The notes under the pieces were generated by a model. That model did not search any database. It was not told the DNA's origin and worked only from the letters and a program-made list of their open reading frames with translations. A program made the position numbers and the translations under genes. DNA of 64,000 bases, taken from positions 464,958 to 528,957 of IMG/VR virus record IMGVR_UViG_3300035182_002586; one strand, given 5' to 3'. Below are positions 41,088 to 60,352 of this stretch, one piece after another. Position 1 is the stretch's first letter, and the number at the start of each line of letters is the position of its first letter.

Positions 41088-41301
41088 AGAGAGTGCCGAT
41101 ACACCCTACTTAGGCGTTTTCAGTCAGAATTTTTGAGCCAACCGGCCCCGGAAACCCACGGTCCCTCGCAGGGCAGAGTCGATTGACCCCATTACCGTGT
41201 TACTGGAACTTCGCCGATCGTCCGCCATATGTGGGTTCAATGTGCCCTTTTTGCAGATCGAGCAACCCAAAAGAGATAATGAGCGAGATCCGTGCCAACC
41301 C

Positions 41302-42265: not shown

Positions 42266-43174
42266 TTACCCATTTTGATGGTCCGTAGCTGCGGGTACGG
42301 GTCTATCCAGTTCACGCGAACGATCGGCAGCCTTGAAGGTCGGGGACAGGTACAGGGACTCGACCGTGTTCTCGCTCCGGCCGCTTAGGGTTGCCTGCGA
42401 CGACACCCCCGCGTGGACCTCAAGATGATGAAGACCGAGGTGCTTCGGCAGGGGCTCTCCGTAGGCTTTTTCGCCGCATCGTCCGTCGAACGAAACGATG
42501 TACGAAATGCCTCGGGCGTTGAGGGACGCGAGGGCTTCTACGAAGCGCCCCCGGTCAAGCTGGTCCCGATACCGTCGGTCCCGACCTTCGCTGGTCCCCT
42601 GGTAGGGCGGGTCCATGTAGACGAGATCGTGAGGTCCGGCCCGGAGCAACAACTGCTCGTAGTCACCCGCCATGACCTCCGTTCGACCGGCCAGAAGTGA
42701 GGCGGCTCCCATCACCTCTTGTCTGAGCTTCTCTGGCCGCATACCGAGGCGTCGGTTGTCGGGCGACTGGTTGAACTCGCCCCTCGGGTTGAACCTCACG
42801 GCGTTCTTCACGCAGCGGGCCAGCAAGTACAGCAGCTTGACGGGATCGCCATCTCGGTTGAAGTCCGCTCGGACCTCATCGTAGAACTCCCGCTGGCGGC
42901 CCTGCTGGTCGTTCCAGAGCGACTCGTAGCCATCGGCAACCTTCCCCGGACTGTTGAGAATGCTGGTCCAGAGGCTCGCCAGGGGCGCGAGAGAGTCACC
43001 CAGCAGGTAGCGACGGCCGAGTTGTTCCTGGGCGGCAGCCAGCGTCACGGCCGCCGACCCCGCGAACGGTTCGATGAGCGTCTCCACCCGCTTGGGGAAG
43101 AGGTCGAGGATCTTCCCCGCGAGGTTTCGCTTGCTTCCCTGGTACGGGATCGGATGGGGAACCTTGCTCATCAC
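42266..43174 (-). CDS. Dam-like (D12-class) N6-adenine DNA methyltransferase
   Basis: PYQGSKR, EPFAGSAA (motif I), DLVYMDPPY (motif IV), RFN..G.FN. Confidence 0.92.
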   Translation of the reverse strand: MMSKVPHPIPYQGSKRNLAGKILDLFPKRVETLIEPFAGSAAVTLAAAQEQLGRRYLLGDSLAPLASLWTSILNSPGKVADGYESLWNDQQGRQREFYDEVRADFNRDGDPVKLLYLLARCVKNAVRFNPRGEFNQSPDNRRLGMRPEKLRQEVMGAASLLAGRTEVMAGDYEQLLLRAGPHDLVYMDPPYQGTSEGRDRRYRDQLDRGRFVEALASLNARGISYIVSFDGRCGEKAYGEPLPKHLGLHHLEVHAGVSSQATLSGRSENTVESLYLSPTFKAADRSRELDRPVPAATDHQNG

Positions 43175-43926: not shown

Positions 43927-44802
43927 TCACGTCGGCGAGGAGCTGCCCGAAGCCGAAGACGGGGCGCTTCCGCCGTAGATCAGGCGTGCGATCCACGTGG
44001 CGAGCGTCGATCGATTCTCGAACTGCGGGTAGAACCGGGACGCACCGCCAGCGTCCGCTTTCACGGTGCGGGCGCTTCCTGACCCACCCTGAAAGCCCAT
44101 CGAGGCCATCTTCTTGGTGATCGTACCGGGGTTCGTCGTGAGGACGCCGCTCATCTCGTCGAGAGCGGCCACAGGGCAACCGGGGGCACAGCTCCAGGCT
44201 GGAACGGCCTCCTTGCCGTCTTCGCCCTTGTATCGTTGGATCTTCACCGGACGGGCTTCGACATCATCGTTCATCAGGCCGAGCGCGGTGTTCCCCGACC
44301 GACTATTCGGACCACCTCCGGTGTTGCGGATCTCTCGTGTCCCTTCGCACGTGCACCCGAGTTTGTGGACGAGGACGAGGTTGGTGGGCCACCGGCCCTT
44401 CGTGGTGTCGTACGCCGTGGAGCCCGACCAAGCGCCGTGGAACCCGGCATCGTGCGCCTTGAGCCGCCCGCTCCCGGGCGTGTTGCAGCGCTCCATCGCC
44501 TTCGCGTCCGCTGTGCTCGTCGTGATGCGGCAGCCGTCGATCCAGAGTCCGCCGGTCCCGGTCTTCATAACTTGCTCGGCCACGGTGCCGTCGAAGGGAA
44601 GCCGGAACAGGGCGGCCATGGCGAAGCCGTGCTCGGTCGCGACGGCGATGGTGTCGCGGAAGGCGAGGCCCGCCTGCCGACCTTCGAGGCAGTGGGGTGC
44701 CCGCGCGCCGAGTACGACGACATGTGCGCCAGGTGGGAGACGATCCCGAAGGCCATCCGTCCAACCTGCTCGCGCCTCGATGACCTCGCCGGGGATCGCC
44801 AT
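43927..44802 (-). CDS. DNA-methylase-derived protein lacking DPPY and FxGxG motifs
   Basis: GLAFRDTI...GTGGLWIDGCRI...GRWPTNLVLVH...CAPGCPVAALDEMSG...GGASRFY, the variable middle of phage N4/N6 MTases; GGTGTA upstream. Confidence 0.75.
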   Translation of the reverse strand: MAIPGEVIEARAGWTDGLRDRLPPGAHVVVLGARAPHCLEGRQAGLAFRDTIAVATEHGFAMAALFRLPFDGTVAEQVMKTGTGGLWIDGCRITTSTADAKAMERCNTPGSGRLKAHDAGFHGAWSGSTAYDTTKGRWPTNLVLVHKLGCTCEGTREIRNTGGGPNSRSGNTALGLMNDDVEARPVKIQRYKGEDGKEAVPAWSCAPGCPVAALDEMSGVLTTNPGTITKKMASMGFQGGSGSARTVKADAGGASRFYPQFENRSTLATWIARLIYGGSAPSSASGSSSPT

Positions 44803-46184
44803 GTCCGGCGCCCCTACACCGGGTTCCCCGCCAGATCGGGGGTTCTGGGACGGCCCGCGAGTATTTCTACGGACCGGGGTTAATCAGCACAGCCGCCGAG
44901 CACACCCGTACCCTACGGTGTGGGTCGCCTACTGGCCGAGCTTTGGTGGCGGGCAGCCTCGGTCGACGTTCCACCACACGTACGCATCGGCTGAGAACGA
45001 TCGCGGGGACGGGTGGTTGACCGAGCCCGCCGTGGTGCTCCCCTGCTACGGCCCAGAGCAAGGGCCGGAAGAACTCGCAGCCCGAGTACGGATCCGGGGA
45101 CAGACCGGGGCCTGGCCTCTCCACCCTCTTAGACCCGAGGAGCGCGAGGTGTCGCAGGCTCCCACCGAGGCCGCGGTGGATCCCGTTGCGGAGGAGATCG
45201 TATCCCAGGCGTTGACGTGGGACGGCACATCGATGGTTCCCGGGGGCGACCTGGAGTGGCAGCAGATCGTGCCCTTCCTTCGAGGCTGGGCGCTGATGGT
45301 TCCAGACGTGCGCGTAGAGAGCGCATCGCGGAGCCGGGTCGTAAACGAGCCGGAGAACCCGGGTGTGGTCTCGATCGTCTTGGTCTCCACCGTGGGGCCG
45401 GGCCGGGCCACCGTAACCGTAGGCCCAGAACCAGACATGGGGACCACGATCTCTTCCACGCCTCACATGAGTTTGTCCGAGATCACGGCACACGGGCACT
45501 TCATGCAGAGGGTGGGCGAGGCGGGCGAGCGCCTCCAGACCTTCCTCCGAGCACACCTCGTCGGTGTAGCGGAGGGCCTGAGATGAACATCGTGCTCCAC
45601 TACACGCCGAGCGACATCATCACCGGGGCGCTGCTTGTCTTCGTCGTGGTGGGGTTCATCATCCTCCGCTGGAGGGCCGGATGACGACGGGACCACGGTG
45701 GGACAGCCGACGTGAGAAGCTTCGGGAGCTACTCCAGGAGGGGCCGGAAGCGCGAAGGGTGCTGGCCGACTCCTGGCTCTCTAGCTCCGCGTGGGCGTCG
45801 GGGCCGGCATTCGAGTGGCAGCTCGAAGTGGGGCGTGCCCTGCTCGACTGGCCGGACGTGGATCGAGACGCAGTGCGGGCCCGACTCGACGAGTTGGTGG
45901 CGCAGCGCCGGACCTAACACTTCGAGGCGACGCCTTTCACATCCGGGTGCGAGACGCGGAGGGCGCTGAGCATCTGGTAGATGTCCGTGTGGTCGGGCAG
46001 GCGCTTGACGTTGCCGAGCGCCCAAGCCGTATCGACCAGGAACGTCTCCCCCCGTGAAGTCTTGACGGTGCTGGTCCCGGGCTGCGGGGCGGGCTCGACC
46101 GCGAAGGTCGTCTCGATCCCCGCGTACTCCGCGACGACGTTCAGCTCTTCCGCGAGGGCTTCGGGGCTCTTGGGCATGACCCCA

Positions 46185-46214
46185 CTACCTCGTGTGGGGG
46201 GCGGGCGATCCATT
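46185..46214 (-). promoter_or_regulatory. Class I motif on the minus strand (first of 8 minus copies)
   Basis: (c)gatccat on plus at 46206, 47593, 48323, 49316, 50038, 50425, 50964, 58951; ctac (GTAG) 25 nt away in most; each precedes a minus-strand ATG. Confidence 0.8.
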
Positions 46215-47006
46215 CGGTGTACAGCGGGAAGGATTCTGGCACGCCCCGCCGGTCCACGCTGAAACGCCGGGACCTTAGCTCGCACACTGCGGTGGTGCGG
46301 GCCTGACAAGCTCGCGGGGAAGGGGCGAAAGACTGCACGGTCAGGTGCGAAAGCGGCCGCCCCTCGTCCCTACCAGGCGGGCATCGGGCTTGGTAGGGAC
46401 GGCGCCGAGGCATTCGCCTCTGCCCACCAACGCGGACGCGGGGGGACTCGTCCGCGTTGGGATCTCGCGCCCTAGCGTTCCTAGGGGTCGCCCCGGAGCC
46501 ATTGCCAGAGGCGGGGCCAGAAGCCAGGCTTGGGCTCGACCTTCTCAACGACCGTGCGATACGTCAACGACTCGGGTGTCTCGGGCTTCGGGCCGTACTT
46601 GTCCCGGAGGCTCTGGATCCACTGCTGGTGCTCGTCGAAGGGGTCCGGAGGCGCGATGCGCTTGACCCGCCAGCCCCTCCCATCGAACACGAGGCCGGCG
46701 CCGACCTTCGGGGGCTCGGCGGAGACGTCCCAGGGCCAGGGCTCGGGTGGCCTCATCGAGGCGGGTCCTCGATCCCGTCCTTCCCGCGAAGGACCGACAT
46801 CAGGACGTCGTAGCCGACGCGCTTCGCTTCCTTGGTCAGGTCGAGCAGCATCGCTTGGTGTCCGGCCTGGTGCCCGCGCTTGTACGCCTCGACGACGATC
46901 GGGTTCTCGTGGTTGAGGAAGCGCTCGTCATCTGCCCGGGAGGACGCACCGATGATCCAGCCGCGCCGGTAGCAGGCGAACCGTTCTTGAGGGGAGAGTG
47001 GTTTCA

Positions 47007-47234
47007 TCATGGGTTATCCAGGGCCGCGAGAGCCCTTGCAGTGGCCTCGTCCATCCACTCCGCGTCGCACCGCGTGCAGGTTGGGATGCAGAGCGTCTCG
47101 GGGATCGCCATCCGGCCGCCCCCTTTGGCGCGCCGGGTCCGGCCGCCCCCTTTGGCGCGCCGGGTCCGGCCGGGCTTCGCCGTGGGCACGACCCGGGCGC
47201 CGCAGTCGGGGCACGTGTCGGGGGCGACGATCAC
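47007..47234 (-). CDS. Small Zn-finger protein (YgiT/MqsA-type zinc ribbon-like) with internal 9-aa duplication
   Basis: CPDCG...IPTCTRCDAEW; RTRRAKGGG x2. Confidence 0.55.
   Translation of the reverse strand: MIVAPDTCPDCGARVVPTAKPGRTRRAKGGGRTRRAKGGGRMAIPETLCIPTCTRCDAEWMDEATARALAALDNP
47111..47172. repeat. In-frame 27-nt tandem duplication
   Basis: tccggccgccccctttggcgcgccggg twice plus 8-nt partial tccggccg. Confidence 0.95.
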
Positions 47235-47729
47235 GAGAGCGTCCTACACCATCTTGTCGGCAGGCGGGCCGGATGTGACAGGGGCCGAGACAAAAAGCAG
47301 ACAGCCCGTGTCCCGACCAAGGGGCACAGGCCAAGGGGCACAGGCTGTCTGCCGCGCTTTGGAGGGCTACAGGAGCGGACCGTAGAGGACGTCACGCCGC
47401 ACGTCCGAGATGGTGCGGCAGGGGGCGCTCGTGTGGAAGTACGGGTTGCCGTCCACCCACGGGTTCTCGGGGACGACGACGGGGCTGACCTCGTAGCCCT
47501 TCTCCAAGAGGGCGGCAGCCATCTTGCGGAGCGTCTCGACGTCGGGGCTTCGGTACGTGGTCATGGGGGGCACTACAACGGGAGGGGCGGGCCGATCCAT
47601 CCGAAGATTGTGGGCTGAGGACTGGACTCTCGGGGACAGTTAGCCCACCGTTTCCCGTTTCAGGGCTGCCGTTGTAGGGAATCACGTGCTTCCGCTACGG
47701 AAGGTCCTGCCAGTCGGGTCGTATCGTGG

Positions 47730-48062
47730 TCAGTCGTTGTTGTGCGGGTCGGGGATGCAGCCGAGGTTCTGGAAGTTGTCGGCGAAGAACTGCTCGACCG
47801 CGCTGAGATTCGTCGTCGGGGCCACGTCCAGCTCGACCCGGAAGCGGGTCTCGCGCGGGGCCGAGATACTCCCCTCGGTGAGGTAGAACGTCGTGCTGGC
47901 GAACGTGCGGTCGGTGGACGGGAGAAGCAGCTCGAACTCCAGGAAGTAGAGCTTCTCGCCCTTCGCGTTCTTGAAGGTCTTCTGCCAGACCTCGCGGCCG
48001 CCGGCCGGATACGTCCTGTATCCGGCCTCGGTGAGGCTCTCTCGGGTGACGGTCTTGTTCAT
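47730..48062 (-). CDS. Phage hypothetical protein
   Basis: MNKTVTRESLTEAGY...NLGCIPDPHNND; ATG at 48062. Confidence 0.6.
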   Translation of the reverse strand: MNKTVTRESLTEAGYRTYPAGGREVWQKTFKNAKGEKLYFLEFELLLPSTDRTFASTTFYLTEGSISAPRETRFRVELDVAPTTNLSAVEQFFADNFQNLGCIPDPHNND

Positions 48063-51000
48063 GGGGTTCAACCCTGCTTGCCGAACGAGTGCGCGACCTC
48101 GTGGTAGTGGGCCGCGCTCATGAGGTGGTACATGATGGCCGAGACGCGGCGCTCGACCGGGAACTGGTCGCGGCCCTGCTCGCCGCTCAGCCAGCGACGC
48201 GCGCACTTGAGGCACGAGCGGGTCAGCTTGAGCGCGTGGGCGCGGGTCATCTCGATGGTGGTCTCGGTCTCGATGGCGGGGTGCAGGCTGTCCATGTCCC
48301 CACTACAGCGGGAGGGGCGGGACGATCCATCCAGAAAAGGTGACGCCGCTAGAGGAGAACCGTCATCCCTGCGAGGAACTGAAGACGTTCCTCCCGGGTG
48401 CGGAACCGGTACATGCCCCCACGGAACGAGAGGCTCAGGTCCTCTGGGAGCGCCTTGTCTTCGTCGTAGAGCCAGTCGAGCAGCTTGTTGAGGGCGCTGG
48501 GAGTGAACCCCTCAGCCTCGTAGACCGGGTGCGGCTCCTGCTGCACGAGGTTGATGTTCATGGTCAGCCTCCGAACTCCTTGATAACGAACTCCGTCTCC
48601 TCGACGAGCCCCATGAGGTTGCGGGCCCGAGCCTGCTCGCAGCGCGTCCGGAGCATCGGCAAGTCGGCGGGGCCGAGCGGGCGAAGAACCTCGCTGAGCG
48701 AGGCCGAGTAGCCCACGGCGGGCTCCTGCACGCCGTCGGAGGGCGCACGGAAGGCGAGGCCCGGACCGGGAGCCTTCCCGGGAGGCGGGGTGTACGGCCC
48801 CTGGTAGCGCAGGATTTTCCCACCCACGAGCATGTAGATCGTGCCGACGGTCAGCGGGCTGTCCATTGCTTCTCCTACACCGCCACCGGGCGGGGAATAC
48901 CAGCGCCAATCACGTAGTAGAGGACCCGCGCGCCAGCGACATCCCTCCAGTAGTATCGGCAAAGCCCTTGCCTGCCAAGGAAGCGGAGTCGCATCACTTG
49001 GGGGTTCTTGGTCATGGGGATCAGAGGGCGAAGAGCGTTTTCTCGACGGCGGTGGCGTTGCGCACGGCGAACCGGATCTCGTAGCCGTCCGTGCGGGCGT
49101 CGCAGTCGAAGTACAACTTCCAGGTCGCCTTGAGCGGGCGGACGAACGCGTCGGCCGGGATGGCGTCGAGGATCGCCTTGACCTTCTTCTCCAGGCGGCC
49201 ACCGGCGACCGAACCGGTCACGCGCAGCTCGCAGGAACCCGTGAGACTGTTGACGAAGAAGCGGCGGGGCTTGGGGGTCTTCGAGGTGGCCATGACTCCA
49301 CTACCTCGCGTGGGGCGATCCATCCGGCCTCGGACGAATTCCTCAGACCTCGATCACGACTTCCTTGTAGGGCTTGCCCACGCCAGGGACGACGAAGATG
49401 TCGACACGGCGCGCCGCCCCGTCCTCGTGAAGGTCCTCCTCCAGCTCGTCCTCGGCCGCGATGAGGACGTAGCCGCCCGTCGCCGCGTAGGAGATCGCCG
49501 GGTCTCGGAACGCCTTGAGGCTCTCCCAAATGCTGGCCGCCACCCTGTCGGGGTCGCCGCCGTAGGTGGGGTTGTTCTTCGCCAGGAAGGTGCACGCACC
49601 GTCGAAGTCCGACTGGCTGAACAGGATCTTCATGAGGTTCTCTCGTACACCGCGGGGGTCGGGGTGGTCACAGGTCGTCCTTCCGGGCGATGAACTCGCG
49701 GTTGTCGGGGTCTTGGTTCGCCCAAGCGACGCCCCAAGCGATGGCCTGGTCGCGCCCTTCACGCGTCTCCGTCACGAAGAGGACCTGGTGGGCATCGAGG
49801 CCCGAACTCGCCCGGACGGACCAACCCTTGAAGGTCTTCGTGAGGATGGCGCCGCGTCGGCCGCGTCGGTGCTGGTCAACCTGCACCTTGATCAGACCGG
49901 GAGAGTCGTACGTGTCGGCATAGCGCCCGGGGGTACAGAGACGACGCGTCTCCTCGTCCCACTTCGAGGGGTTGCCGGCGAGGAGCGTGAAGTGCGCGGT
50001 GTTGACCATGACCCTACTACAGCGGGACCCCCAAGGGGATCCATCCGCGAACTCTTCTACCTGAGCGTGACAATACACATACCTCCTGTAGGGCTGAGGG
50101 TTGACGGAGAGAGGGTCACACGAGGCCGAAGTTCGCCAGCACGCACTCCTGCTCGACGATCGCCTTGAGCAGGCCGTCCTTCTTCGCAGCGAGGAGCTTG
50201 TACCCCTGCGAGCCGACCGGGAAGTTCGAGTAGATCGGGTCGGCGTCGAGGTCACGGAGCTGCATGACGAGCGCGGTGCGCTCCTCGATGGCCGTGAAGA
50301 CCTTGCCGGCCTCTTCGCTGTCCAGCTCGATGAAGCGGGCTTCCAGCTCGGCTTCGACGAAGTTGTAGAGCGCGGGGTTCGAGGACTTGAGGGCGGCGGC
50401 CTTGGACATGCGCGTGGGTGGGGACGATCCATCCGGAATCGTCACCCGGTGATCCGGCTGAAGTCGAGCTTGTCGTGCGGATCCATCAGCCGACCGACCG
50501 TAGCGGGACGACCTCGGGCTTGGGGAGCATGACGGTATCACCCAAGGCGAGAACAGCATCCTCCCAAGGACCGCGCTTGAACGCCACGATGTTCGGGGGG
50601 AACTTGGCGCTTCCCCCGGCAACGGCGTTGAACCACCGCAGGCCGAAGACCTTGAGGCCGTTCTCCCCCCACAGGTCGATAAGGTACCAGTAAGGGGTGT
50701 GCGAACGGAGAATCATCTTCCCGCTGGAGTCGACGAAGCCGTCGCACGGCTTCTGCTTCGGCGCCACCGTGAACGGCGTCTCCAAGGACACGTGGAAAGG
50801 GCCGACATCGAACGTCCGGCGAGACGGGGCCGTTTCGTTCACGTGCCATGCGGCGGTGTCGGGGTGGTTGGCGAGGAGACGCAGCAGAGCGTCCCGAAGG
50901 GCCAGGGCGCGTTCGAGACGGGTCGGCTTCTTCATACCCACCACTACCGCGGAAGGGTCACCTCGATCCATCACCGAGGGGCCGACCGCGAAGGACCGAG

Positions 51001-51396
51001 AGGCAGACCTCTTCGTCGATCATCAAGTGCTCGCTCCTGCGGGCGCCACAAACGACACAGGGCGGGTCTTCTTCCGGCGGAGGCGGGGGGACTAGTTCGC
51101 GATAGGGGGCAGCGCCTAGATGCCGTCGCATCCGCAGTTCTCCAGAGCCGCCTTGCACATCTTGCAGCGCTTCGGGGCCTGAGGGGCCGCTCCCGTGCCA
51201 TGTGCCGTGACGGACACCCCGACACAGGCATAGGCCCGGGTCTACCACAGCTTCCGTCCGATCCAGGATCCGAAAACGAGAGTTCGCGGCGGTTAGCTGC
51301 AACTTGCATCTCTAGTTGCAACTTCAACTCGGCGCCGATCCCGAACGATCCCGGGCACTTACGCAGCGAGTCCCGGCTGGATGAGCCAGGCGCGAC

Positions 51397-51430
51397 GAAG
51401 CCCACGTCCCCGGTGAGGGACGTGGGCTTC
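51397..51430 (-). terminator. Perfect 14-bp hairpin, probable terminator
   Basis: gaagcccacgtccc-cggtga-gggacgtgggcttc just after the stop of the minus gene at 51454; no long U tract. Confidence 0.65.
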
Positions 51431-51453
51431 CTACCGCTTGAGGACCTACAGGC

Positions 51454-51801
51454 TCACTTCCCGAGCGATGTCAGGGACTTCTTCGCCGACTCCAGGCGCA
51501 TCTCGGCGCCCTTGATGGCCGACAGCTCGTTCGCGATCACAGTGTCGATGACCTTCTCCAGGTCCGAGCCGTGAGTCGTGCCCGGCAGCGTGTGGCGGTC
51601 GTCCATCTTGATCGAGACTTCCCACCCGTTGCGCTTCGAGTGCGCCGAGACGACCACGCCGTGGCCTTCGAGGACCCAGAGGTTCTGACCGTACTTCTCG
51701 CCGGGCGCCGGGGCTGCGTACGAACCCACGAGCTTGAGGGGCTTGCCCTTGTAGGTCGGGGTATCGGAGTCCGTGTTGGCTTGGTTGTAGCGGTACGACA
51801 T
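51454..51801 (-). CDS. Hypothetical protein starting MSYRYNQA
   Basis: ATG 51801 after GGGAGAG; shares its N-terminus with the neighbour. Confidence 0.7.
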   Translation of the reverse strand: MSYRYNQANTDSDTPTYKGKPLKLVGSYAAPAPGEKYGQNLWVLEGHGVVVSAHSKRNGWEVSIKMDDRHTLPGTTHGSDLEKVIDTVIANELSAIKGAEMRLESAKKSLTSLGK

Positions 51802-51812
51802 GGTGCTCTCCC

Positions 51813-52064
51813 TCAGACCGTCTTGCCGAAGACCTTCGCCACCATGGCGACCGCCTCGTGGGCCTTCTTCTCGATCCCCCGAAGCTCCACCTTGTCTTCG
51901 AGCGACGAGACCTCCTTGGACGCCTTGTTGGCCTCCGCGGCGATCTTCCTGAGGTCCTCCATCGCCTTGGTGGTCCACTCCCACGTCTTGTCGTGGATCT
52001 TGGCCTTGATGGAGTCCGCGCCTGCGGCCGTCTTGTCCGAAGCCTGGTTGTAGCGGTAGCTCAT
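51813..52064 (-). CDS. Hypothetical helical protein starting MSYRYNQA
   Basis: ATG 52064; same 8-aa N-terminus as 51454-51801. Confidence 0.7.
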   Translation of the reverse strand: MSYRYNQASDKTAAGADSIKAKIHDKTWEWTTKAMEDLRKIAAEANKASKEVSSLEDKVELRGIEKKAHEAVAMVAKVFGKTV

Positions 52065-52368
52065 GATACGAGCCCCCCGAATAGAAACTTTCGCGGGCCG
52101 TTCCCCCACGTCCGCCGTGGGATCCTGCGTCCTGGGCCGGTGTACGGGGCTCCCATGCCCGAACGCGCGGAGATCCACAGCCTCGTCGTGACGGGCAACG
52201 AGCCCAACGGCGGCATCACCATGGTCATCGATCGGGGCGAAGGCGTCGAGGGGCGCTTTCTGTGCGTCGAGATCCCGCAGGCCCTCCTCGCAGGCTTCAT
52301 CGAGGCCCCCCAGAAGGCCGCCGCCGATATGGCCCCGAAGACGACGCACTAGGTGTACGGAGCCGGGC

Positions 52369-52566
52369 ATGTCCGTCTCCACCCCCGAGAAGAAGTCGTT
52401 CGAGCCCGGCGCCGTTGTGTCCCTTCGTTCGGGCGGCCCCCTGATGACCGTGCACTCCACGAGCTGCGTCAGTGGGAGCGAGCAGATCGCGTGCATCTGG
52501 TTCACCAACGGTGGTGACCTCCGGACCGAGAGCTTCCTCGCATGCGTGCTCAAGGCCGGCGCCTAG
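52369..52566 (+). CDS. DUF2158 (YodC-like) protein
   Basis: FEPGAVVSLRSGGPLMTV...CIWF...ESF. Confidence 0.85.
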   Translation: MSVSTPEKKSFEPGAVVSLRSGGPLMTVHSTSCVSGSEQIACIWFTNGGDLRTESFLACVLKAGA

Positions 52567-52583
52567 GGTAGCCTCGGGCCCAC

Positions 52584-53564
52584 ATGCCGACCGGTGACCC
52601 TCTCTGCCCTTGCGGTTGCGGTGCGTACCTGAACCAGTGCCGGGGCGCGCCCCAGGACATGATCATCTCGGAAGAGCAGATCGTCCGACTGGGGGAGCAG
52701 ATCGTCCAGATGCAGGACAGGTCCGTCCTCGAACACCTGTGGGACGAACAGCCGGTCGTCTCTCGACCCCAAGAGGTTGTTGCCCTCATACAGCGCCTCA
52801 TCGAGCAGGGGATCCCCTTCGCGATCGGCGCCGACGGGCAGCTCGAAGCCATCCCCGCCGTCCCACGAATTGCCGGCATGGACCTCACCCCGACCGCGGG
52901 CACACGATCCGGCCCCATCTCGATGGGAACCCGCGTAGGCGCCGACCTGGGGGTCGATCAGGGGACGCACATCATCGGGTACGCGATGGCGCCGACCCCC
53001 AGCGACGGCCTTGTCTCCGTGAGCTTCCCCTCGACCGGACCGTGGGGCGAGCTGACCGAAGAGGAGCAGCGGCTCCTGGACGAGGCGGGCCTAGTCGAGG
53101 ATCTGCCACAGGCTCCCAGCCAGGACGAGCTGGATCGCCTCCGAAGTCTCACGGCACGTCTACGCATCGCCGCAGGGGAGCACGAGGAGCCTTCTGATCT
53201 ACCCCCCGAGATGTACACGACCCTCCGCGACATGTTCCCTGCGGCCGTACCAGCCGGCGCACCCCTCGTCTGGAACGGCACCTCCTGGTCGGGCGGCGCT
53301 GGCCCCATCCCCGAAACGGACGAGATGAGGCGCATCCAGCTCATCGGGGAGGTGGTCAACCGCATCCTCGCCCCCAACGCCCCCGACGCGCTCCGGGCCT
53401 CGGTCACATCGCTCTTCATCACGTCCGATCACCAAGTCGAGGAGTTCGAGGAGCACCTGCGCACCATCCGGCGCTACACACACCTCACCACGGCCGCCCC
53501 CGAGCCCGAACCGGCCCCGGAACCGGCACTTTCCCTGTGGGAACGCCTCGGAGAGGACGAATAG
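52584..53564 (+). CDS. Hypothetical acidic/Pro-rich protein ending LWERLGEDE
   Basis: 326 aa; N-terminal CPCGCG; shared C-terminal motif. Confidence 0.65.
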   Translation: MPTGDPLCPCGCGAYLNQCRGAPQDMIISEEQIVRLGEQIVQMQDRSVLEHLWDEQPVVSRPQEVVALIQRLIEQGIPFAIGADGQLEAIPAVPRIAGMDLTPTAGTRSGPISMGTRVGADLGVDQGTHIIGYAMAPTPSDGLVSVSFPSTGPWGELTEEEQRLLDEAGLVEDLPQAPSQDELDRLRSLTARLRIAAGEHEEPSDLPPEMYTTLRDMFPAAVPAGAPLVWNGTSWSGGAGPIPETDEMRRIQLIGEVVNRILAPNAPDALRASVTSLFITSDHQVEEFEEHLRTIRRYTHLTTAAPEPEPAPEPALSLWERLGEDE

Positions 53565-54533
53565 GGCTCAAATTCGCCCCTCTGGGCCTGTTTCCCATGC
53601 GGACCGGGCCGGATCGCGTCCGCGATGGCTTCCTGTGGGTCCGAAGGGCCGCAATTCCCGATGGATCGGCGCCCTCCCCACGCTGTAGTGAGGGGCATGA
53701 GCACGGATCCCAACTGCGAACGCTACCACCGAAGCCCGGGCGTGCTGTCCCGCCGCTTCCGCTGTGGCGGCTGCAAGCGTCTGGTGTGCTCCAAGTGCTG
53801 CACGCGCGGCGGGCGGGGACAGGGGCAAGGGTCCACGCGATGGGCCGAGTGCTTCGACTGCCAGGCGACGCGTGAAGCGAAGATGTCCAACCGGAAGCAC
53901 TGAGGCACCACCATGACTCGTAAGCCCACGCGCAGGCGTACCCCCAAGGCAGTCCCCGCTCCGGTCACCCTCCCGAAGGGCTCCCTCTCCGTGGACGGTT
54001 ACTCCTACACGAGCGTGAAGGGGCGCGTCTTCACCCTCGGCCCCATCGAGCATGAGGAGCGGTGGCCGGGCGACCCCCTGTGGTCGGATACCATCCAAGT
54101 CCTGCTCGACGGCGAGCCTGCCGGCAAGCTGTTCCAGAGCGAGTCCTACGGCAAGACCGCGAACGACGAGCCCCGCTGGAACGCCAGCCTGAACGGCCTG
54201 CGCATGAAGCTCCTCAAGTGGGGCGAGAGCACGCCGTACGGCATCGGATTCGATGTCGCCGCCTTCGACACCATGGAGGAATGCCTCCACGCTTGGAGCC
54301 GGAGCGCAGACGGCCTCCTCGACTGGCGTGAGGCGAATCCGCTGGTGTAGTCCCTCTTGTGGGAAGGGCGAAAGTGATGTCCTACTCGTACGACTTGAGG
54401 TAGGCCATCTGGACGGGGGAGAACTTCTCTGCGGCAAGGGCGAGAAGGTCATCGAGGGGCTGTTCGGGCTCAAGCGTCGCTAATTCGATCGCGACCGGAT
54501 GGATCGGCGCCACCCTCACGCTGTAGGGGGGAC

Positions 54534-55031
54534 ATGACCACCTCGACGACCTCCACCGAGTCCATGACCGTCCAGGCCGCGCGCGAGCTGTGCTACGAGC
54601 TGGTCCGCACGCTCCTCACCGACCGCGGCCGCCAGACCATCAAGGCGCGCGTCGAGACGACCGAAGAAGTCGCCGCTGTCTTCGAGAACGGCCGCTATGT
54701 CCAGCGCCGCGTCGAGTCGGGCCGCATCATCTTCGAGGGTGGCCTCACGGGCTCGCACGCACTGGAGCTGAGCGTCTCGTCCGAAGCCCGCGTGCGCACC
54801 CACTTCGAGGGCTACTGCGAGAACAACGGCTGCTTCAAGCCGAGCGTTGGCCAGAAGGTCGACTTCCCCTCCGGCTCGGCCCGCTCCGGCTGGCGCACCG
54901 GTCGCGTCGTCAAGGTCGGCACCAAGCGCGCCGTGGTGGCGTTCACCTACAAGCACGGCGGCGAGAGCACGGCGACCGTGAGCTTCGACAAGCTCCGCAT
55001 GTACGTTCGCAAGATGGGTCCGGTGTCGTGA
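54534..55031 (+). CDS. Hypothetical protein with C-terminal SH3/KOW-like domain
   Basis: After the class I motif at 54498; VGQKV...GRVVKVGTKRAVV. Confidence 0.7.
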   Translation: MTTSTTSTESMTVQAARELCYELVRTLLTDRGRQTIKARVETTEEVAAVFENGRYVQRRVESGRIIFEGGLTGSHALELSVSSEARVRTHFEGYCENNGCFKPSVGQKVDFPSGSARSGWRTGRVVKVGTKRAVVAFTYKHGGESTATVSFDKLRMYVRKMGPVS

Positions 55032-55776
55032 TGACCACCCTGCTCTACAGCGATGCCGTCCGCTACCTCAAGACGGCCGTACGCGTCCAGGACGCTGCCC
55101 TCACCAAGCTGGCCCTCGACTACTTCAAGGCCAACAACGTCACGAGCCGCGAAGCCTACCGCATCGCCCTCGCGGGCGACCCCTCCCTCACCTGGGATGA
55201 GTGGACCGATCTTCTCGCGCGCGCTGGAGTCCAGTTGCCGTGAGAGACGCCTGGTGAACCATGATGGTCTCCGCCATCATGGTTCACCAGGGCCTCCAGT
55301 CCGCCAGCCGCAGCACATGCGGGAAAGTTGATCAAAAGATGGAAATTCCCCTCCTCGTCGTCCGGCTCCACTCGACCACACTCCCGGCTGGCCCCGCGCG
55401 CGTCATCGCCCACGTGGCGAACGTCAAAGAGTTCCTCGCCATGCGGACCGACCGGTGGGGAGAGGGGTACGACCCCGCTCTTCGCCTGTGGCAGGGCAAC
55501 GTCCCGGTCGGCGAGATGGCCTGGCTCCCGTGACCCGACACGTTGCCTCTCACGAAGTCTTCGAGGGGGCACTCGTCTTCTGGATGCACGTCCCACGCGG
55601 CGGGTATGGGTTCACCCTCCCCGTGGAAGCCAAGGTCCTGACCCTCAACCCGGCCGGCACGAGGGCCAAGATCGAGGTCACGACGAAAACGGGCCGGAAA
55701 GTCCAGCGGATCGTGGACACCGAGAATCTTCGCTGGCGCTGATGGATCGGGCCCACCCCCACGCGGTAGTGGAGAC

Positions 55777-56259
55777 ATGACCACCACCGAGAGCTTCGTC
55801 GAAGTCGGCAAGAACAAGATCACCTCGTGGGAGACCACGGTGACGGTCGAGCGCACCCCGGCGACCATCGACGACCTCGACTGGAAGTCGCGCTGGTTCA
55901 TGGACGTCGGCAGCCAGATCGCCAAGGTCGAGCGCTGCAAGATCACCCGCACCTTCGAGAAGTCGAGCAACCCGTACGTCGAGACGGGCTTCGAGGTGAC
56001 CTTCCTCTGCGGCGCCAAGGGCTGGATCACGGTCTACCGCGACTACTCCGAGCTGAACGCCCTCGTGGTCGGCACCAAGGGCTACCTCCACGGCCTCGCC
56101 GTGTGGCGCAAGCACCGGAACATCGTCGGCCACTGCGTCCCCTGGTTCACGGCGCAGATGGGCGACCGCAAGCGCCTGAACGCCAACACCGCCCCCCGGT
56201 GCTGCGCCGCCGAGCTGTACGCCCGCGCCGCCGGCAAGCCGTGGGGCACCACGGTCTGA
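55777..56259 (+). CDS. Hypothetical protein
   Basis: After the class I motif at 55741; RBS GGAG. Confidence 0.7.
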   Translation: MTTTESFVEVGKNKITSWETTVTVERTPATIDDLDWKSRWFMDVGSQIAKVERCKITRTFEKSSNPYVETGFEVTFLCGAKGWITVYRDYSELNALVVGTKGYLHGLAVWRKHRNIVGHCVPWFTAQMGDRKRLNANTAPRCCAAELYARAAGKPWGTTV

Positions 56260-56379
56260 AAGGACCTCGGAACAATACGTCCGTGGGACCGAAGAAGACC
56301 TGCCCGGCGACGTGCAGATGCGCATGTACCGCGCCCCCCCACGGATGGATCGGCGCCCACCCCGCACGGTAGTATCCCC

Positions 56380-56709
56380 ATGCCGAACCTGATCGTCACC
56401 AACGACAAGGGCCGCAGCTTCACCGTCCGCATCGTCCGGAAGGGCGACCGCTACGGGCTCAACGACTGCCTCACCCACAACAAGGCCGAACCCCTCGTCG
56501 AGTTCTACGACCTCACCTACACGAAGAACTTCGGCCCCCTCGGGCAGTTCGTCTCCCGCTACTACCTCGATACCATCGCCGACATCCCCCTCGGCCAAGG
56601 CATCGACCTCATGGGCTACGAGCCCGTGTGGAAGATCGATGGCCCCACCATGCAGACCGTCATCGAGCACGCCCGGCGCACCCGCCGCGAGCTTGGGGCC
56701 GTCCGGTGA
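56380..56709 (+). CDS. Conserved-looking phage protein (GDRYG..CL...PLVEFYD...GQFVSRYY)
   Basis: After the class I motif at 56344. Confidence 0.7.
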   Translation: MPNLIVTNDKGRSFTVRIVRKGDRYGLNDCLTHNKAEPLVEFYDLTYTKNFGPLGQFVSRYYLDTIADIPLGQGIDLMGYEPVWKIDGPTMQTVIEHARRTRRELGAVR

Positions 56710-57180
56710 AGCGCAAGCCCACCTGGAAGCAGGACACGCCACGGATGCAGACCGTCGCCTGCGTCATGAGCGCCCAAGGCGACCTCCTGAACCTCCTCGC
56801 CGGCCACAGCCCCAACCCGAAGCTCGCCATGGAGCGAGCCCTCGGCTTCCTCACCGAAGCACAGGAGATCCTCCGGCACTTCGTCCCCGAAGGGGAGTGG
56901 CCGAAGGATGGCTAGCAGACGCAGGGAGGCTCCTTGTAGCGTCCAGGGTCGGACCGGACGAGTCCCTCCGCGTCCGCGGTGGAAACCAGCGCCACAGCGC
57001 CCGCCTAGCAGACCGTAGGCGGAGTCGGGCCGGGAGCGAAGAGGGGTCGTTGAAGCACCACCTGACCCACAACCTTGGCCTTCGCCCCCTCACGCTCCGG
57101 CACCTCGACCACATCGGTCACCTGCTCGACGCGACCATCCGTAAGCAGCCGAACATCTGTACGCCCACCCGGTACACCGT

Positions 57181-58074
57181 TCAGCACTTCAGGTGCTCCT
57201 CCGCCTCCGCCATCCGGTACGGCCGCCCGCACCGCCGGCAGTGCCAGAACCACTCGCCCGGCTGGAGCCTCCGCCGGTGCGCCCGCTCCAGTTGCCCCTC
57301 CCGGAAGCCCTTCATGTAGTCCGGCGACGTCCCGCCCGGCGTCAGCCCGGCCAGACCGTCCCGCTCCCCCTGGAGGAACCGCAGCCCGGCCACGGCCTCC
57401 GCCTGGTGCGGGTCCCGGTACATCCCGAGACGCTCCGCCGTCAGCTCGTCCACGACCCTCGCCAGACCGGATAAAGTGGTGTTTTGACCCCCGGGCGAAG
57501 CCCCCTGGTCCCCATCGGGATCGCGGGGATCCTCGGGGTTTCCGGGATCCGCAGCCGGAAGGGCCGCAGCGGTCGGCTCGGCCCAATCCGAGTTCCTCCA
57601 GCAGTGAACCTCACGGGTGGCACCACACCCACACGAGCATCCGGGGGGCGGCTCCCCGAAGGGCCCGACCCGAGAAGCTCGCGCCCGCTCGAAGGCCAGG
57701 TCCCGTGCCCGCTCTTCGTCCGAAGGGAGGATACCCGCCTCGCGCATCTCGGCCTCGACGGCCGCCTCGGTCTCCGGGTCCGCCTCGAAGTCCGCGAGGA
57801 GCCGCTCCCGGGCCATCTGCTGTTCGGGGGTGACCCACCCCTCGGGCGATGGGATCCCTTCCCCTAGCGCCGCTCCGAGGGCGAGACGGGCCAGCTTGAG
57901 GGCACCCTCCGCCCGCCGATGGTAGATGGTGTGCTGCTGGTCGCTCCCCTCCCGCGTCACGCCGTAGGTCGCGACCCCGCGCTCGTCCTCGGTCACGTGG
58001 ACCACGCGCACGGTCTCGACGACACGAGGCGCCTCCCCGCTCGCGGGTAGCACCTCGATCCGGATCCTCAGCAT
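57181..58074 (-). CDS. Hypothetical protein
   Basis: 297 aa; GGTGTA upstream (about 58085). Confidence 0.55.
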   Translation of the reverse strand: MLRIRIEVLPASGEAPRVVETVRVVHVTEDERGVATYGVTREGSDQQHTIYHRRAEGALKLARLALGAALGEGIPSPEGWVTPEQQMARERLLADFEADPETEAAVEAEMREAGILPSDEERARDLAFERARASRVGPFGEPPPGCSCGCGATREVHCWRNSDWAEPTAAALPAADPGNPEDPRDPDGDQGASPGGQNTTLSGLARVVDELTAERLGMYRDPHQAEAVAGLRFLQGERDGLAGLTPGGTSPDYMKGFREGQLERAHRRRLQPGEWFWHCRRCGRPYRMAEAEEHLKC

Positions 58075-58550
58075 GGGGACGGTCTACACCGGGTCGGGCC
58101 AGACCGTGCGGGGCTCCCCGGGCCGGACCACCTCGCACCGGGCCGGGGCAGGAGGAAGGTCCGGAACTCCCGGGTCATGTCCACCCGCTCGATGCCCACA
58201 TCCAGGCCGAGCGAATCCGCCTGCGCGTGCGCCCGCTCCCGAGCCGCTCGGTACTTCCGGGTCCCCTCCGGCGTCGTGGTCCAGTCCATGGCCGTTCTAC
58301 CTTCCATCCGCCAGCTCCCCCGGCGGTGGCTTCTATGTCCAGGTCGGGGCGAAATCCCTCGCCCGAAATTCTCAGAACCCGAGGAGCCGGCTGAGCGCCA
58401 GGCACCAGTGCCAGAGCGACACGGGCGAGTCCAGCCCCCGGACCACCCTGCGGGTCACCCGCAGGGTCACCCGCAGGGTCACCACGGCCGCAGTCCGGGG
58501 CTCGATGCCCCGGTCGTACGGCACGTCCACCGTCCAGCCCCCGGCGTCCA

Positions 58551-58922
58551 TCAGCCGAAGATCCCACCGTCGTAGAAGGTGCCGTCCTCGTCCGCCTTCT
58601 TCTCGGCGGCGATCTCTTCGGCTGCGCCATCGGCGTACGCCTCCGAGCCGTACATCGGCCACGTCGGCGTCCAGTGGGCCGACCCTTCCGGACGCTCCCC
58701 ACGGGCCAGGCGACGACGCACGGCCGGAACGCAACGGGCCGCCGCCTCCGCCGAACCGAAGCTGCGCTGCGACAGCCAACGCTCCCCGTTCGGGGCCTCG
58801 ACCATCACGAAGTACACCTCGACCTCGCGACGCTCCCCATCCTCCGGATGACGCGGACCCCACGCCAGTCGGGAAGTCGGGCCCACGTGCCACTCACCAG
58901 CCGAAGTCGTCAGGGTCGCCAT
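58551..58922 (-). CDS. Hypothetical protein (MATLTTSAGEW...)
   Basis: ATG at 58922 after the minus class I motif at 58951. Confidence 0.65.
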   Translation of the reverse strand: MATLTTSAGEWHVGPTSRLAWGPRHPEDGERREVEVYFVMVEAPNGERWLSQRSFGSAEAAARCVPAVRRRLARGERPEGSAHWTPTWPMYGSEAYADGAAEEIAAEKKADEDGTFYDGGIFG

Positions 58923-59215
58923 GTCCCTCCTACAGCGCGGGCCGGGTCGAGATCCATCCACGACCGGACGCTTCCGGGGCCGGCGTACGGGCGGGTGCGA
59001 TAACGCAATGCGTCGGGGATCGTGTCCGTCGGGACCGGATCCCCGACCGGAAAATCGACAGGGGCGGACCGGCTGGATTTCCGGGCTGGCATGGTCATTG
59101 ACCGTGCCATTACCGTTCGTGGCCGGATCCGCCAACGGTCGTGATCGGGTTTGGCACTTGGTGATCCATACCCCATATAAGCGACGCGTGCGTCATCGGG
59201 AACCCCCTAGCCCCG

Positions 59216-59370
59216 GATCAGGTCCGATCAGGTCCGATCAGGTCAGGTCCGATCAGGTCAGGTCAGGTCCGATCAGGTCCGATCAGGTCAGGTCCGATCA
59301 GGTCCGATCAGGTCAGGTCCGATCAGGTCCGGTCAGGTCCGGTCAGGTCCGGTCAGGTCCGGTCAGGTCG
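59216..59370. repeat. Array of 31 in-register pentamers (GATCA/GGTCC/GGTCA) with 9 GATC sites
   Basis: Read directly; non-coding, lies between the 58551-58922 gene/promoter and the stop of 59465-60352. Confidence 0.97.
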
Positions 59371-59397
59371 GGGGCTTCGCCAGGACCGGACTGTGTG

Positions 59398-59435
59398 TTG
59401 AGCACCCACCCTTGAGCACCCACCCTTGAGCACCC
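59398..59435. repeat. 14-bp direct repeats TTGAGCACCCACCC x2 plus partial (iteron-like)
   Basis: 59398-59411, 59412-59425, partial 59426-59435. Confidence 0.9.
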
Positions 59436-59464
59436 GGTCTGGCTGAGGCCATGGCGGGACAACT

Positions 59465-60352
59465 TCACCCTTCGGTGAGTGTCTTGGCCGTCTCCAGTCC
59501 TTTCGGGGTGGGCTGCCAGAAGCGCTTACCGCCAAGGGAGCGTTTGGAGACGAGGCCCGCCTTGGTGAGGTCATAGAGGGCGTTGAAGGCGACCGTGTAG
59601 TCGACGCCTAGAGAGCGAGCGACCCAAGCGCACCGGACGGGTGCTTGAGCGGCCACGAGGACTTTGAGGACGGTCTCTGAGCGTCGGAGGGGGACGTCTT
59701 TGGGGAGGTAGTTGCGCGGCTGTTCTAAACCCACGACGAAGTGTCCGAGGGCGATGGGCCAGCCGGGCCAGTGGTTTCCGTAGAAGCGGCGGGGGTTGCC
59801 GGGTGCCCGTGAGTCGAGGAGTCCGGTGTCGTACCTTTCGAACCAGTCATCTTGGTCACGGATGCCGATGTCTCGGGCGTACTGTGTGCACTGGTTGAGG
59901 GTGAACTTCCCGATGGGTTCGATGGGTTCGGGAGCTTCTTCGGGGGGTGGTTTCACGAAGCCAGCTCGGGCATCTGCGATCCACTGCAACAGGTCGGGCC
60001 CCATGGTGAACCACTCGCCTCCGACCCTGAGGTGTTTGAACCGGGCGTGGATGGCGTGTTCTTGGTCAGACTGTGGGAGTACGAGGAGAAGGAAGACGGG
60101 GTAGGGGGTGTTGGTTCGGACCGTGCTCATCCGTGACCGAACGTCTTTAGCGACGCCGATCTTGATGCGATCGAGACAGAGGATGGCGTAGACACCTGGA
60201 GTGACGGGCGGGAGGAGCGGTGGGAGGTCGAATCCCTTCTCGATGAGGATGTCTCGTCCGTCCCGCACCCCGGAGATGGACGGGGGGTGTGGGAGGGGGG
60301 CGAGTGTCTGAACGTAGGGGCGTTTCCGTCGAGCGAGGGCGCGGGCCTGCAT
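59465..60352 (-). CDS. T5orf172/GIY-YIG-like + integrase-repeat-like unit + winged-HTH protein
   Basis: GVYAI...IKIGVAKDVRSRM...EHAIHARF..LRVGGEWF; ARDIGIRDQDDW...PGNP..FY...WPGW..ALG; C-terminal VARSLGV...LY.L.KAGLV. Confidence 0.8.
   Translation of the reverse strand: MQARALARRKRPYVQTLAPLPHPPSISGVRDGRDILIEKGFDLPPLLPPVTPGVYAILCLDRIKIGVAKDVRSRMSTVRTNTPYPVFLLLVLPQSDQEHAIHARFKHLRVGGEWFTMGPDLLQWIADARAGFVKPPPEEAPEPIEPIGKFTLNQCTQYARDIGIRDQDDWFERYDTGLLDSRAPGNPRRFYGNHWPGWPIALGHFVVGLEQPRNYLPKDVPLRRSETVLKVLVAAQAPVRCAWVARSLGVDYTVAFNALYDLTKAGLVSKRSLGGKRFWQPTPKGLETAKTLTEG

What the first reader, a model, noticed from the sequence alone, without database searches (positions are those of the whole stretch)
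59140..59440. Candidate replication origin: GATC-rich pentamer array plus iterons at a strand-skew switch
Seen: 31 consecutive in-register pentamers GATCA/GGTCC/GGTCA (155 bp, 10-bp helical periodicity, 9 GATC), then 14-bp direct repeats. By eye the plus strand is C-rich to the left, even over minus-strand genes (57-58 kb), and G-rich to the right, even over the plus-strand gene at 60.7-61.3 kb. That C-to-G direction is the one expected at an origin. The pentamer order looks like a graded mosaic (GATCA replaced by GGTCA toward the right end). Inference: an origin or initiator-loading array; a packaging or nucleoid-protein binding site is the alternative.
Basis: partly seen in the sequence, partly recalled or inferred. 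Interest (0 to 1): 0.7.

Follow-up and report, generated by a model that had tools for sequence, protein, structure and literature searches.

The report
Repeat array at a phage genome-end boundary
The 155-base array of five-letter repeats is real and unique in a roughly 620-kb giant phage genome. It does not behave like a replication origin. It sits where sequencing depth halves, which fits the inner edge of a doubled (terminally repeated) genome end and a role in DNA packaging.

Summary
There are 31 in-register pentamers at 59216-59370, carrying 9 GATC sites, followed by three 14-bp repeats. A second, independent assembly reproduces the array letter for letter. The sharpest GC-skew step of the whole 529-kb record falls on it.

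The origin reading does not hold:
- On 96% of the parent 620-kb contig the skew inflection is only local. About 5 kb is positive, and then skew is near zero on the far side.
- There is no AT-rich unwinding region and no DnaA gene, and no recognisable initiator gene nearby. The helicase gene lies 200 kb away.
- Depth shows a step, not a peak. In the source run the 13 kb measured left of the array is at 30-37x. The array and the 5 kb to its right are at about 16x. A 39-kb unitig from elsewhere in the phage is at 17.8x. Two further samples show the same 2:1 step.

My best reading (confidence 0.4) is that the array marks the inner edge of a 15-19 kb terminally redundant, DTR-like block. It would act as a protein-binding signal for genome-end formation or packaging, possibly gated by Dam methylation as in P1 pac.

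The rivals are a strain or mosaic junction, a regulatory or partition array, and an origin. Raw-read termini would decide between them.

The parts
59216..59370 (.). Tandem array of 31 pentamers of the form G[A/G]TC[A/C]. Sub-array 59216-59325 carries the 9 GATC sites. Sub-array 59326-59370 is a GGTCC/GGTCA alternation.
   Evidence: Identical in a second assembly. k-mer depth inside the array is about 1x.
59398..59439 (.). Three 14-bp direct repeats of TTGAGCACCCACCC, two perfect and one at 79% identity.
   Evidence: The 10-mer TTGAGCACCC is found only here in the record.
58923..59464 (.). A 542-bp non-coding spacer between two minus-strand genes. It has 15 GATC sites, the record's maximum density, and no AT-rich stretch (GC 0.63-0.66).
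   Evidence: JGI gene calls.
58923..58965 (-). Phage promoter-like motif (GATGGATC, 16-17 nt, TGTAG, then ATG 5-7 nt on) that drives gene 58551-58922. It is the last of 57 such sites, and none lies to the right of the array.
59012..59047 (.). Inverted repeat with 16-nt arms and a 4-nt loop, carrying GATC. A GGATCC-centred palindrome lies at 59118-59137. Inverted copies of the array unit (GACCGGA) lie at 58962, 59033, 59045 and 59384.
59465..60352 (-). Gene for a T5orf172/MUG113 (GIY-YIG-like) domain protein with a C-terminal MarR-type winged helix. The array lies about 95 bp downstream of its stop codon. JGI calls a 267-aa form that starts at 60268.
   Evidence: Z 11-13 over 72-78 residues. 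No homologue among 5.8 billion proteins.
58551..58922 (-). A 123-aa gene with no known relatives, the first gene left of the spacer.
44592..59217 (.). Minimum extent of the double-depth block. Depth was measured at 46300-59247. The left edge lies somewhere between about 40000 and 46300. A contig from the second sample spans 44592-59519.
40101..40946 (-). The only other MUG113/T5orf172 gene in the record. It lies in a lower-GC island just outside the likely left edge of the block.
42266..43174 (-). D12-class (Dam-like) adenine methyltransferase, one of two in the record.

Best explanation
The array is a protein-binding repeat that marks the inner edge of the terminally redundant end of a roughly 620-kb phage genome.

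Shown:
- It is a unique and stable array in a non-coding spacer.
- At or just left of its left edge, depth falls from 2x to 1x with no alternative junction in the unitig that reaches it.
- GC content (0.70 to 0.64), GC skew and the phage's own promoter motif all change there.

Inferred:
- The 15-19 kb double-depth block is a direct terminal repeat, or a single-headful redundancy, of the packaged DNA.
- The array is part of the signal where the packaging machinery recognises or finishes the genome end. It lies on the unique side, next to further GATC-bearing palindromes.

Speculative:
- The nine GATC sites could let the phage's Dam-like methylases gate cutting, as at P1 pac.
- The array could alternatively act as a T5-like boundary or stop signal next to an early-gene-rich repeat.
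For: Depth (Logan unitigs of the source run):
- Window 46.3-59.25 kb is at 30-36.6x, and 59.34-64.36 kb is at 15.7x.
- A 39,406-nt unitig at 17.8x is the phage's own G000 406-446 kb.
- The same roughly 2:1 step appears in two other samples, about 7.3 against 3.7 and about 4.7 against 2.7.
- Mini-unitigs inside the array (25.4, 48.4 and 17.3x) fit 1x once k-mer multiplicity is counted.
- The 7-kb unitig runs unbranched into the array.
- Window 30-39.9 kb looks like 1x by share of words.

Other evidence:
- PhageTerm states that DTR regions show twice the average coverage (PMC5557969).
- P1 pac is 161 bp with seven TGATCA/G hexamers and is regulated by Dam (PMC10028697; PMC12707154).
- The record encodes two Dam-like methylases, and GATC is 2.2-fold over-represented.
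- The array is identical in a second assembly.
- In T5, a repeat-rich untranslated region resembling oriC lies within the left terminal repeat and is not an origin (10.1101/866236).
Against: - Only contigs were available, not raw reads, so no read-end pile-up could be seen.
- The 1x level of the main genome rests on one unitig in one run, plus a coverage proxy in the other two.
- The left edge of the block is not located.
- No terminase gene is nearby. The TerL-like gene lies about 147 kb away if the contig is circular.
- The array is contiguous, not bipartite like P1 pac.
- Similar decamer arrays occur in ordinary intergenic regions of unrelated bacteria, so this sequence type can exist without any packaging role.
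- Bulk metagenome DNA need not be virion DNA.
Confidence: 0.4

Rival explanations
1. Mosaic or strain junction with a passive simple-sequence repeat. On this reading the block is shared by two co-occurring near-identical phages, or is duplicated. The right-hand 5 kb is an acquired cassette led by a homing-endonuclease-like T5orf172 gene. The array is slippage-born DNA at the recombination joint with no dedicated function.
For: - GC content, skew and gene novelty all change at the array.
- Unitigs must break inside the array in any case, so a branch could hide there.
- The block shows more unitig breaks than the 39-kb 1x unitig, and it holds a polymorphic 27-bp repeat in X1.
- Decamer arrays of the same type occur in unrelated bacteria, between housekeeping genes.
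Against: - The ratio stays near 2:1 in three samples whose absolute depth differs six-fold.
- Apart from the 27-bp repeat at 47.1 kb, no other allele-type bubble was seen in the 8.7 kb of the block that was laid.
- No second copy of the block or the array exists in 96% of the contig.
- The array is identical between samples, so it is not hypervariable.
Confidence: 0.2
2. Binding array for a regulator or a partition-type protein. A candidate is the adjacent T5orf172 protein with its MarR-like winged helix. The array would act as an operator, a silencer or insulator, or a centromere-like site, unrelated to genome ends.
For: - A confident C-terminal winged helix resembles MarR and PadR. TubR, which binds arrays of direct repeats, is also among the fold matches.
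- The array lies about 250 bp upstream of a phage promoter.
- Inverted copies of the array unit flank the array.
Against: - No ParA, TubZ or similar gene was recognised nearby.
- This reading does not explain the depth step.
- The neighbouring protein has no relatives, so co-variation cannot be tested.
Confidence: 0.15
3. Replication origin. Initiator molecules load on the pentamers and iterons, GATC methylation times firing, and forks leave in both directions.
For: - The sharpest C-to-G skew step in the record lies exactly here, across genes on both strands.
- Repeats and a GATC cluster recall oriC and P1 oriR (own knowledge).
- The raw cumulative skew at the array (-1520) is almost as low as the global minimum of -1577.
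Against: - Positive skew lasts only about 5 kb, and contig 23-90 kb is near zero.
- After correction for gene strand, the global minimum lies near G000 95 kb. After detrending, the array is at -530 against a minimum of -1315.
- The coding strand is C-rich genome-wide, so strongly biased genes that converge on the array can mimic this sign.
- There is no AT-rich stretch and no DnaA gene. DnaB lies 200 kb away.
- Depth is a flat 2x plateau that has returned to 1x by 80-118 kb, not a peak or a gradient.
Confidence: 0.1
4. Replication fork barrier or local over-replication. A protein-coated array stops forks, so the block to its left is over-represented.
For: There is a sharp one-sided depth step at a repeat array.
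Against: A ratio of almost exactly two in three different samples, together with a flat plateau, is not expected from stalled replication.
Confidence: 0.05

Closest known systems
Phage P1 pac site
   Same: Both are about 160 bp and hold multiple short GATC-containing repeats (P1 has TGATCA/G, this array has CGATCAGG). The phage encodes its own Dam-type methylase. Coverage steps at the site.
   Different: P1 has 4 + 3 hexamers around a central cut site and an IHF site, and its pac lies inside pacA. Here the array is one contiguous run of 31 pentamers in a non-coding spacer, no terminase gene is adjacent, and the 2x ratio is larger than the slight rise expected for processive headful packaging.
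Long direct terminal repeats of T5, SPO1 and relatives, and the T5 untranslated repeat region (iss)
   Same: Both have a multi-kb terminal repeat rich in small early-type genes and promoters. In both, a complex non-coding repeat region goes with the terminal repeat. In T5 this region also resembles an origin but is not one.
   Different: T5 iss lies inside the repeat and is built from DnaA boxes, inverted repeats and palindromes. Here the array appears to lie just outside the repeat, is a pentamer array, and two-step injection is unknown for this phage.
T7 concatemer junction (arrays of short repeats flanking the 160-bp terminal repeat)
   Same: Arrays of short imperfect direct repeats lie next to the terminal repeat on the unique side (own knowledge, Dunn and Studier 1983; not checked here).
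   Different: T7 has heptamer units, a 160-bp repeat and a 40-kb genome, and GATC is not involved.
oriC and P1 oriR GATC clusters
   Same: Both have a dense GATC cluster beside other repeats and a skew change.
   Different: This locus has no AT-rich unwinding element, no DnaA boxes, no recognisable initiator gene nearby and no copy-number peak.
Centromere-like repeat arrays (R1 parC, TP228 parH, pSM19035 heptads, tubC)
   Same: Both are contiguous arrays of very short direct repeats bound cooperatively by small DNA-binding proteins. TubR is among the fold matches of the neighbouring protein.
   Different: No partition NTPase was recognised, and a lytic-type giant phage has no obvious need for one.

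Membership tests
Bacterial or phage replication origin (oriC or iteron type) | Genome-scale GC-skew polarity switch | tested here: not met
   There is only a local step. The positive stretch is about 5 kb, and the global minima lie elsewhere after strand correction or detrending.
Bacterial or phage replication origin (oriC or iteron type) | AT-rich unwinding element next to the repeats | tested here: not met
   Spacer GC is 0.63-0.66 and the lowest 51-bp patch is 0.55. The record's AT-rich windows lie elsewhere.
Bacterial or phage replication origin (oriC or iteron type) | Initiator or replication genes adjacent, or DnaA boxes | tested here: not met
   There is no DnaA gene. DnaB lies at G000 322 kb. 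The neighbours have no known relatives, or carry a T5orf172 domain.
Bacterial or phage replication origin (oriC or iteron type) | Copy-number maximum centred on the site | tested here: not met
   Depth is a one-sided 2:1 step with a plateau.
Direct terminal repeat or terminal redundancy boundary | Block at twice the depth of the rest of the genome | tested here: met
   30-36.6x against 15.7x and 17.8x in X1, with the same step in X2 and X3.
Direct terminal repeat or terminal redundancy boundary | Two sharp edges, with read starts and ends piled up at them | not testable with these tools
   Only assembled unitigs were served. The left edge is bracketed to window 40-46.3 kb by a coverage proxy.
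Direct terminal repeat or terminal redundancy boundary | No alternative sequence joined at the edge | tested here: inconclusive
   The unitig is unbranched up to 59247, but it must break there because of repeated 31-mers.
P1-type pac site | Cluster of short GATC-bearing repeats of about 160 bp, and a phage Dam methylase | tested here: met
P1-type pac site | Bipartite repeats around a cut site, located in or next to the terminase gene | tested here: not met
   The array is contiguous. The TerL-like gene lies at G000 51-52 kb.
P1-type pac site | Methylation-dependent cleavage by the terminase | not testable with these tools
   This needs methylation-aware reads or biochemistry.
Centromere-like partition site | Adjacent partition NTPase and adaptor genes | tested here: not met
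   None was recognised in Pfam or PHROGs scans of the neighbours.

The most novel reading that the evidence does not exclude
The pentamer array is the cis-acting, Dam-methylation-gated end-formation (packaging) signal of a roughly 620-kb phage that packages DNA with a 15-19 kb direct terminal repeat. If so, it may be the first such site pinpointed for a phage of this size; I did not check the literature for earlier examples. The only two T5orf172-family proteins in the genome bracket the repeat and may take part in defining its ends.
Probability: 0.25. Interest if true: 0.65.

Novelty: new variant of a known kind. Interest (0 to 1): 0.45.

Why it matters
How the very largest phages define and package their genome ends is largely unknown to me; I did not review the literature on this. 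Most of these phages are known only from metagenome assemblies, where ends are invisible.

This locus offers a discrete sequence element that coincides with a two-fold depth boundary. That gives a concrete, testable candidate for a packaging or terminus signal, and a way to find such boundaries in other assemblies.

The case also carries a caution. A repeat array with a GATC cluster and the sharpest skew step in a genome can look like an origin without being one.

Tried and rejected
- BLAST of the spacer against the phage and plasmid collections found no match.
- Relatives of the two flanking proteins: IMG/VR held no useful locus. Among 5.8 billion proteins there was only the protein itself, plus one 68% relative on a 1.2-kb contig.
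- Rfam and tRNA scans of the window found nothing.
- The consensus promoter and terminator scan found nothing.
- The RNA fold of the array has z = -0.15, so it is not a structured RNA.
- Two related giant-phage fragments, found through DnaB at 62-63% identity, have no pentamer array.
- The 25-bp higher-order unit has no hit in metagenome contigs.
- The plain decamer 24-mer hits unrelated bacterial intergenic regions only.
- Atlas look-alikes for the neighbouring proteins were uninformative.
- Prophage-host junction was rejected. The right-hand 5 kb has no host-like genes and has the same depth as the phage's main body. The part cut off as 'host' is phage-like.
- A second copy of the block beyond the contig end was rejected. 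The last 453 bp and the block have no second copy in the 96% of the contig that was seen.

Full report
WHAT THE WINDOW IS. The window is the last 64 kb of a 528,957-bp IMG/VR record labelled 'provirus'. That record was cut from a 620,031-bp JGI contig, Ga0373636_0000001. The contig ends 453 bp after the window does. The roughly 90 kb removed as 'host' was walked back to contig position 23,428. It carries Endonuclease VII, HNH and NUDIX genes, a tRNA synthetase, an EF-Ts domain and many genes with no known relatives. It therefore looks like phage, not host. A major head protein (phrog_2522, E = 4e-53) and a TerL-like gene confirm that this is a tailed phage. The object is a giant phage of at least 620 kb and 64% GC.

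THE OBSERVATION. Window 59216-59370 holds 31 in-register pentamers: 12 GGTCC, 9 GATCA, 9 GGTCA and 1 GGTCG. They carry 9 GATC sites, all within the first 22 units. The last 9 units are a GGTCC/GGTCA alternation ending in GGTCG. Three 14-bp repeats follow at 59398-59439. The array is unique in 96% of the contig. It lies in a 542-bp non-coding spacer between two minus-strand genes. About 95 bp separate it from the stop codon of a T5orf172/MUG113 gene. About 250 bp separate it from a promoter-like motif that drives a 123-aa gene. The spacer has the record's highest GATC density, 15 sites against a mean of 4.0. An independent assembly from a second sample crosses the array with the same unit order and the same flanks, so it is neither an artefact nor hypervariable. 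It does not fold as RNA (z = -0.15).

SKEW. The 2-kb right-minus-left skew jump of 0.287 at window 59243 is the largest in the record. It holds over genes on both strands. It is still only local.
- Genome-wide, the coding strand is C-rich at third codon positions (mean -0.07), so skew mostly follows gene orientation.
- Strongly biased plus-strand genes lie at 52.6-56.7 kb and minus-strand genes at 59.5-64 kb. They converge on the array and give the same sign as an origin. Three genes are exceptions to this explanation.
- After regressing out strand, the cumulative curve has its minimum near G000 95 kb and a plateau maximum at 326-430 kb. The array is a small dip on a long descending arm.
- On the extended sequence (contig 23,428-620,031) the raw minimum is at contig 179.5 kb (-1577). 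The array reaches -1520, but only 5 kb of rise follows it, and contig 23-90 kb has skew within +/-0.05.

DEPTH. Three runs hold the locus: X1 (the source sample, a sediment) and X2 and X3 (microbial mats). Only assembled unitigs were available.
- In X1, unitigs over window 46.3-59.25 kb have depths of 36.2, 36.6, 33.3, 30.0 and 34.4. The unitig over 59.34-64.36 kb has 15.7.
- A 39,406-nt unitig with depth 17.8 touched the laid stretch only through a short promoter-like match. Its length, and the gene it carries, identify it as the phage's own G000 406-446 kb, and the coordinates fit exactly. The main genome is therefore at about 16-18x, and the 13 kb measured left of the array is doubled.
- X2 (about 7.3 against 3.7) and X3 (about 4.7 against 2.7) show the same step.
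- Three mini-unitigs inside the array have depths of 25.4, 48.4 and 17.3. Once I counted how often each 31-mer recurs within the array, these values fit 1x and not 2x. The step therefore lies at or just left of the array's left edge.
- The 7-kb unitig reaches 59247 without a branch. It would have to break there in any case, because the 31-mers beyond that point are repeated.
- Window 30-39.9 kb gives word shares of 0.80 in X2 and 0.37 in X3. These resemble the 1x stretch (about 0.73 and 0.3), not the 2x stretch (about 0.98 and 0.7-0.86). The left edge therefore lies between about 40 and 46.3 kb, and the block is roughly 15-19 kb long.

INTERPRETATION. A flat two-fold plateau with a sharp edge and no visible alternative junction is what collapsed direct terminal repeats look like (PMC5557969). 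A replication origin would give a peak or a gradient. Here, depth is back to baseline 80-118 kb away. The phage's own promoter motif is dense on the left: 42 of its 57 sites lie in G000 417-524 kb, and the last one is next to the array. The motif is absent on the right. This recalls the early-gene-rich terminal repeats of T5 and SPO1. In T5, a repeat-rich, oriC-like untranslated region lies within the left terminal repeat, and it is an injection-stop signal, not an origin (10.1101/866236). P1 pac is a 161-bp cluster of seven GATC-bearing hexamers whose cleavage depends on Dam methylation. This phage encodes two Dam-like methylases and is 2.2-fold enriched in GATC. I therefore read the array as part of the end-formation or packaging signal at the inner edge of a terminal redundancy, with confidence 0.4.

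NEIGHBOURING PROTEINS. The adjacent protein combines a T5orf172 (GIY-YIG-like) domain with a MarR-like winged helix. The N-terminal part of the model has low confidence, while the C-terminal 189-267 matches at Z 11-13. It and one distant paralogue at 40.1-40.9 kb are the only two such genes in the record, and they bracket the block. This is suggestive but untested.

CAVEATS AND RIVALS.
- The 1x baseline for the main genome rests on one unitig in one run.
- A branch could hide inside the array.
- The block shows more unitig breaks than the 1x unitig, and it has a polymorphic 27-bp repeat in X1.
- A block shared between two equally abundant strains, or a mosaic junction with a passive repeat, stays possible (0.2). 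The constant 2:1 ratio across a six-fold range of abundance argues against it.
- Decamer arrays of the same type lie between housekeeping genes in unrelated high-GC bacteria, and they are multi-copy in one metagenome-assembled genome. This kind of sequence therefore does not by itself imply a packaging role.
- A regulatory or partition-type binding array (0.15), an origin (0.1) and a fork barrier (0.05) remain possible.

VERDICT. The feature is real, and its position is unusual. The origin reading is not supported. A genome-end or packaging boundary is the best-supported reading, and raw reads can test it directly.

Noticed in passing
window 36262-36881 and 36889-39279 (-): A CRISPR array of 9 identical 36-nt repeats with 35-40 nt spacers lies right next to a 767-796 aa Cas12-like protein (TNB domain, E = 1.6e-10). 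This is a compact phage-encoded type V system.
   Followed up: partly
57 sites in G000, e.g. window 597, 3299, 53660, 58958: A phage-specific promoter-like motif reads GATGGATC, 16-17 nt, [T/G]GTAG, then ATG 5-7 nt later. This suggests near-leaderless transcripts. 42 of the 57 sites cluster in G000 417-524 kb, and the -35-like box holds a GATC site.
   Followed up: partly
G000 294,984-295,087 (outside the window): One of the most AT-rich 100-bp windows of the record (44% GC) carries three exact 21-bp direct repeats. A 14-bp x 3.4 repeat lies 4 kb away, at a gene-strand switch. This is a more classical iteron-type origin candidate than the pentamer array.
   Followed up: no
parent contig, positions 1-90,621 (L026, L040-L042, L049-L051): The 'provirus' label looks wrong. 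The part cut off as host carries phage-like genes plus a tRNA synthetase, an EF-Ts domain, adenylosuccinate synthetase and a peptidyl-tRNA hydrolase. A tyrosine integrase gene lies near contig position 23.1-23.4 kb.
   Followed up: partly
L005-L007 (one MAG labelled Bifidobacteriaceae), L043, L047, L048 and others: (GATCNGGTCN)n arrays of 5-28 pentamers recur in the intergenic regions of unrelated high-GC bacteria. In the MAG they are multi-copy and flanked by conserved hairpins. In L047 one lies about 250 bp from a Dam-like methylase gene.
   Followed up: partly
window 47111-47172: A 27-bp tandem repeat (2.3 copies) appears polymorphic in the source sample. The allele-specific unitig is at 20x against flanks at 36x. 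It is not polymorphic in X2.
   Followed up: no
window 40101-41300: A lower-GC island holds the second MUG113 gene, which has Cys-rich motifs. It is followed by a 355-bp AT-richer non-coding stretch. The window's other C-to-G skew flip falls here, close to the likely left edge of the double-depth block.
   Followed up: partly
window 56773-58947, run X4: A hot-spring metagenome holds a relative at about 88% identity. It has a 181-bp deletion and small insertions in and just upstream of the 297-aa gene, and its coverage is too low to see its version of the array.
   Followed up: no
G000 34229-34313 and 157354-157810: Other conspicuous tandem repeats are a perfect 12-bp x 7.1 array and a 173-bp x 2.7 array.
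   Followed up: no
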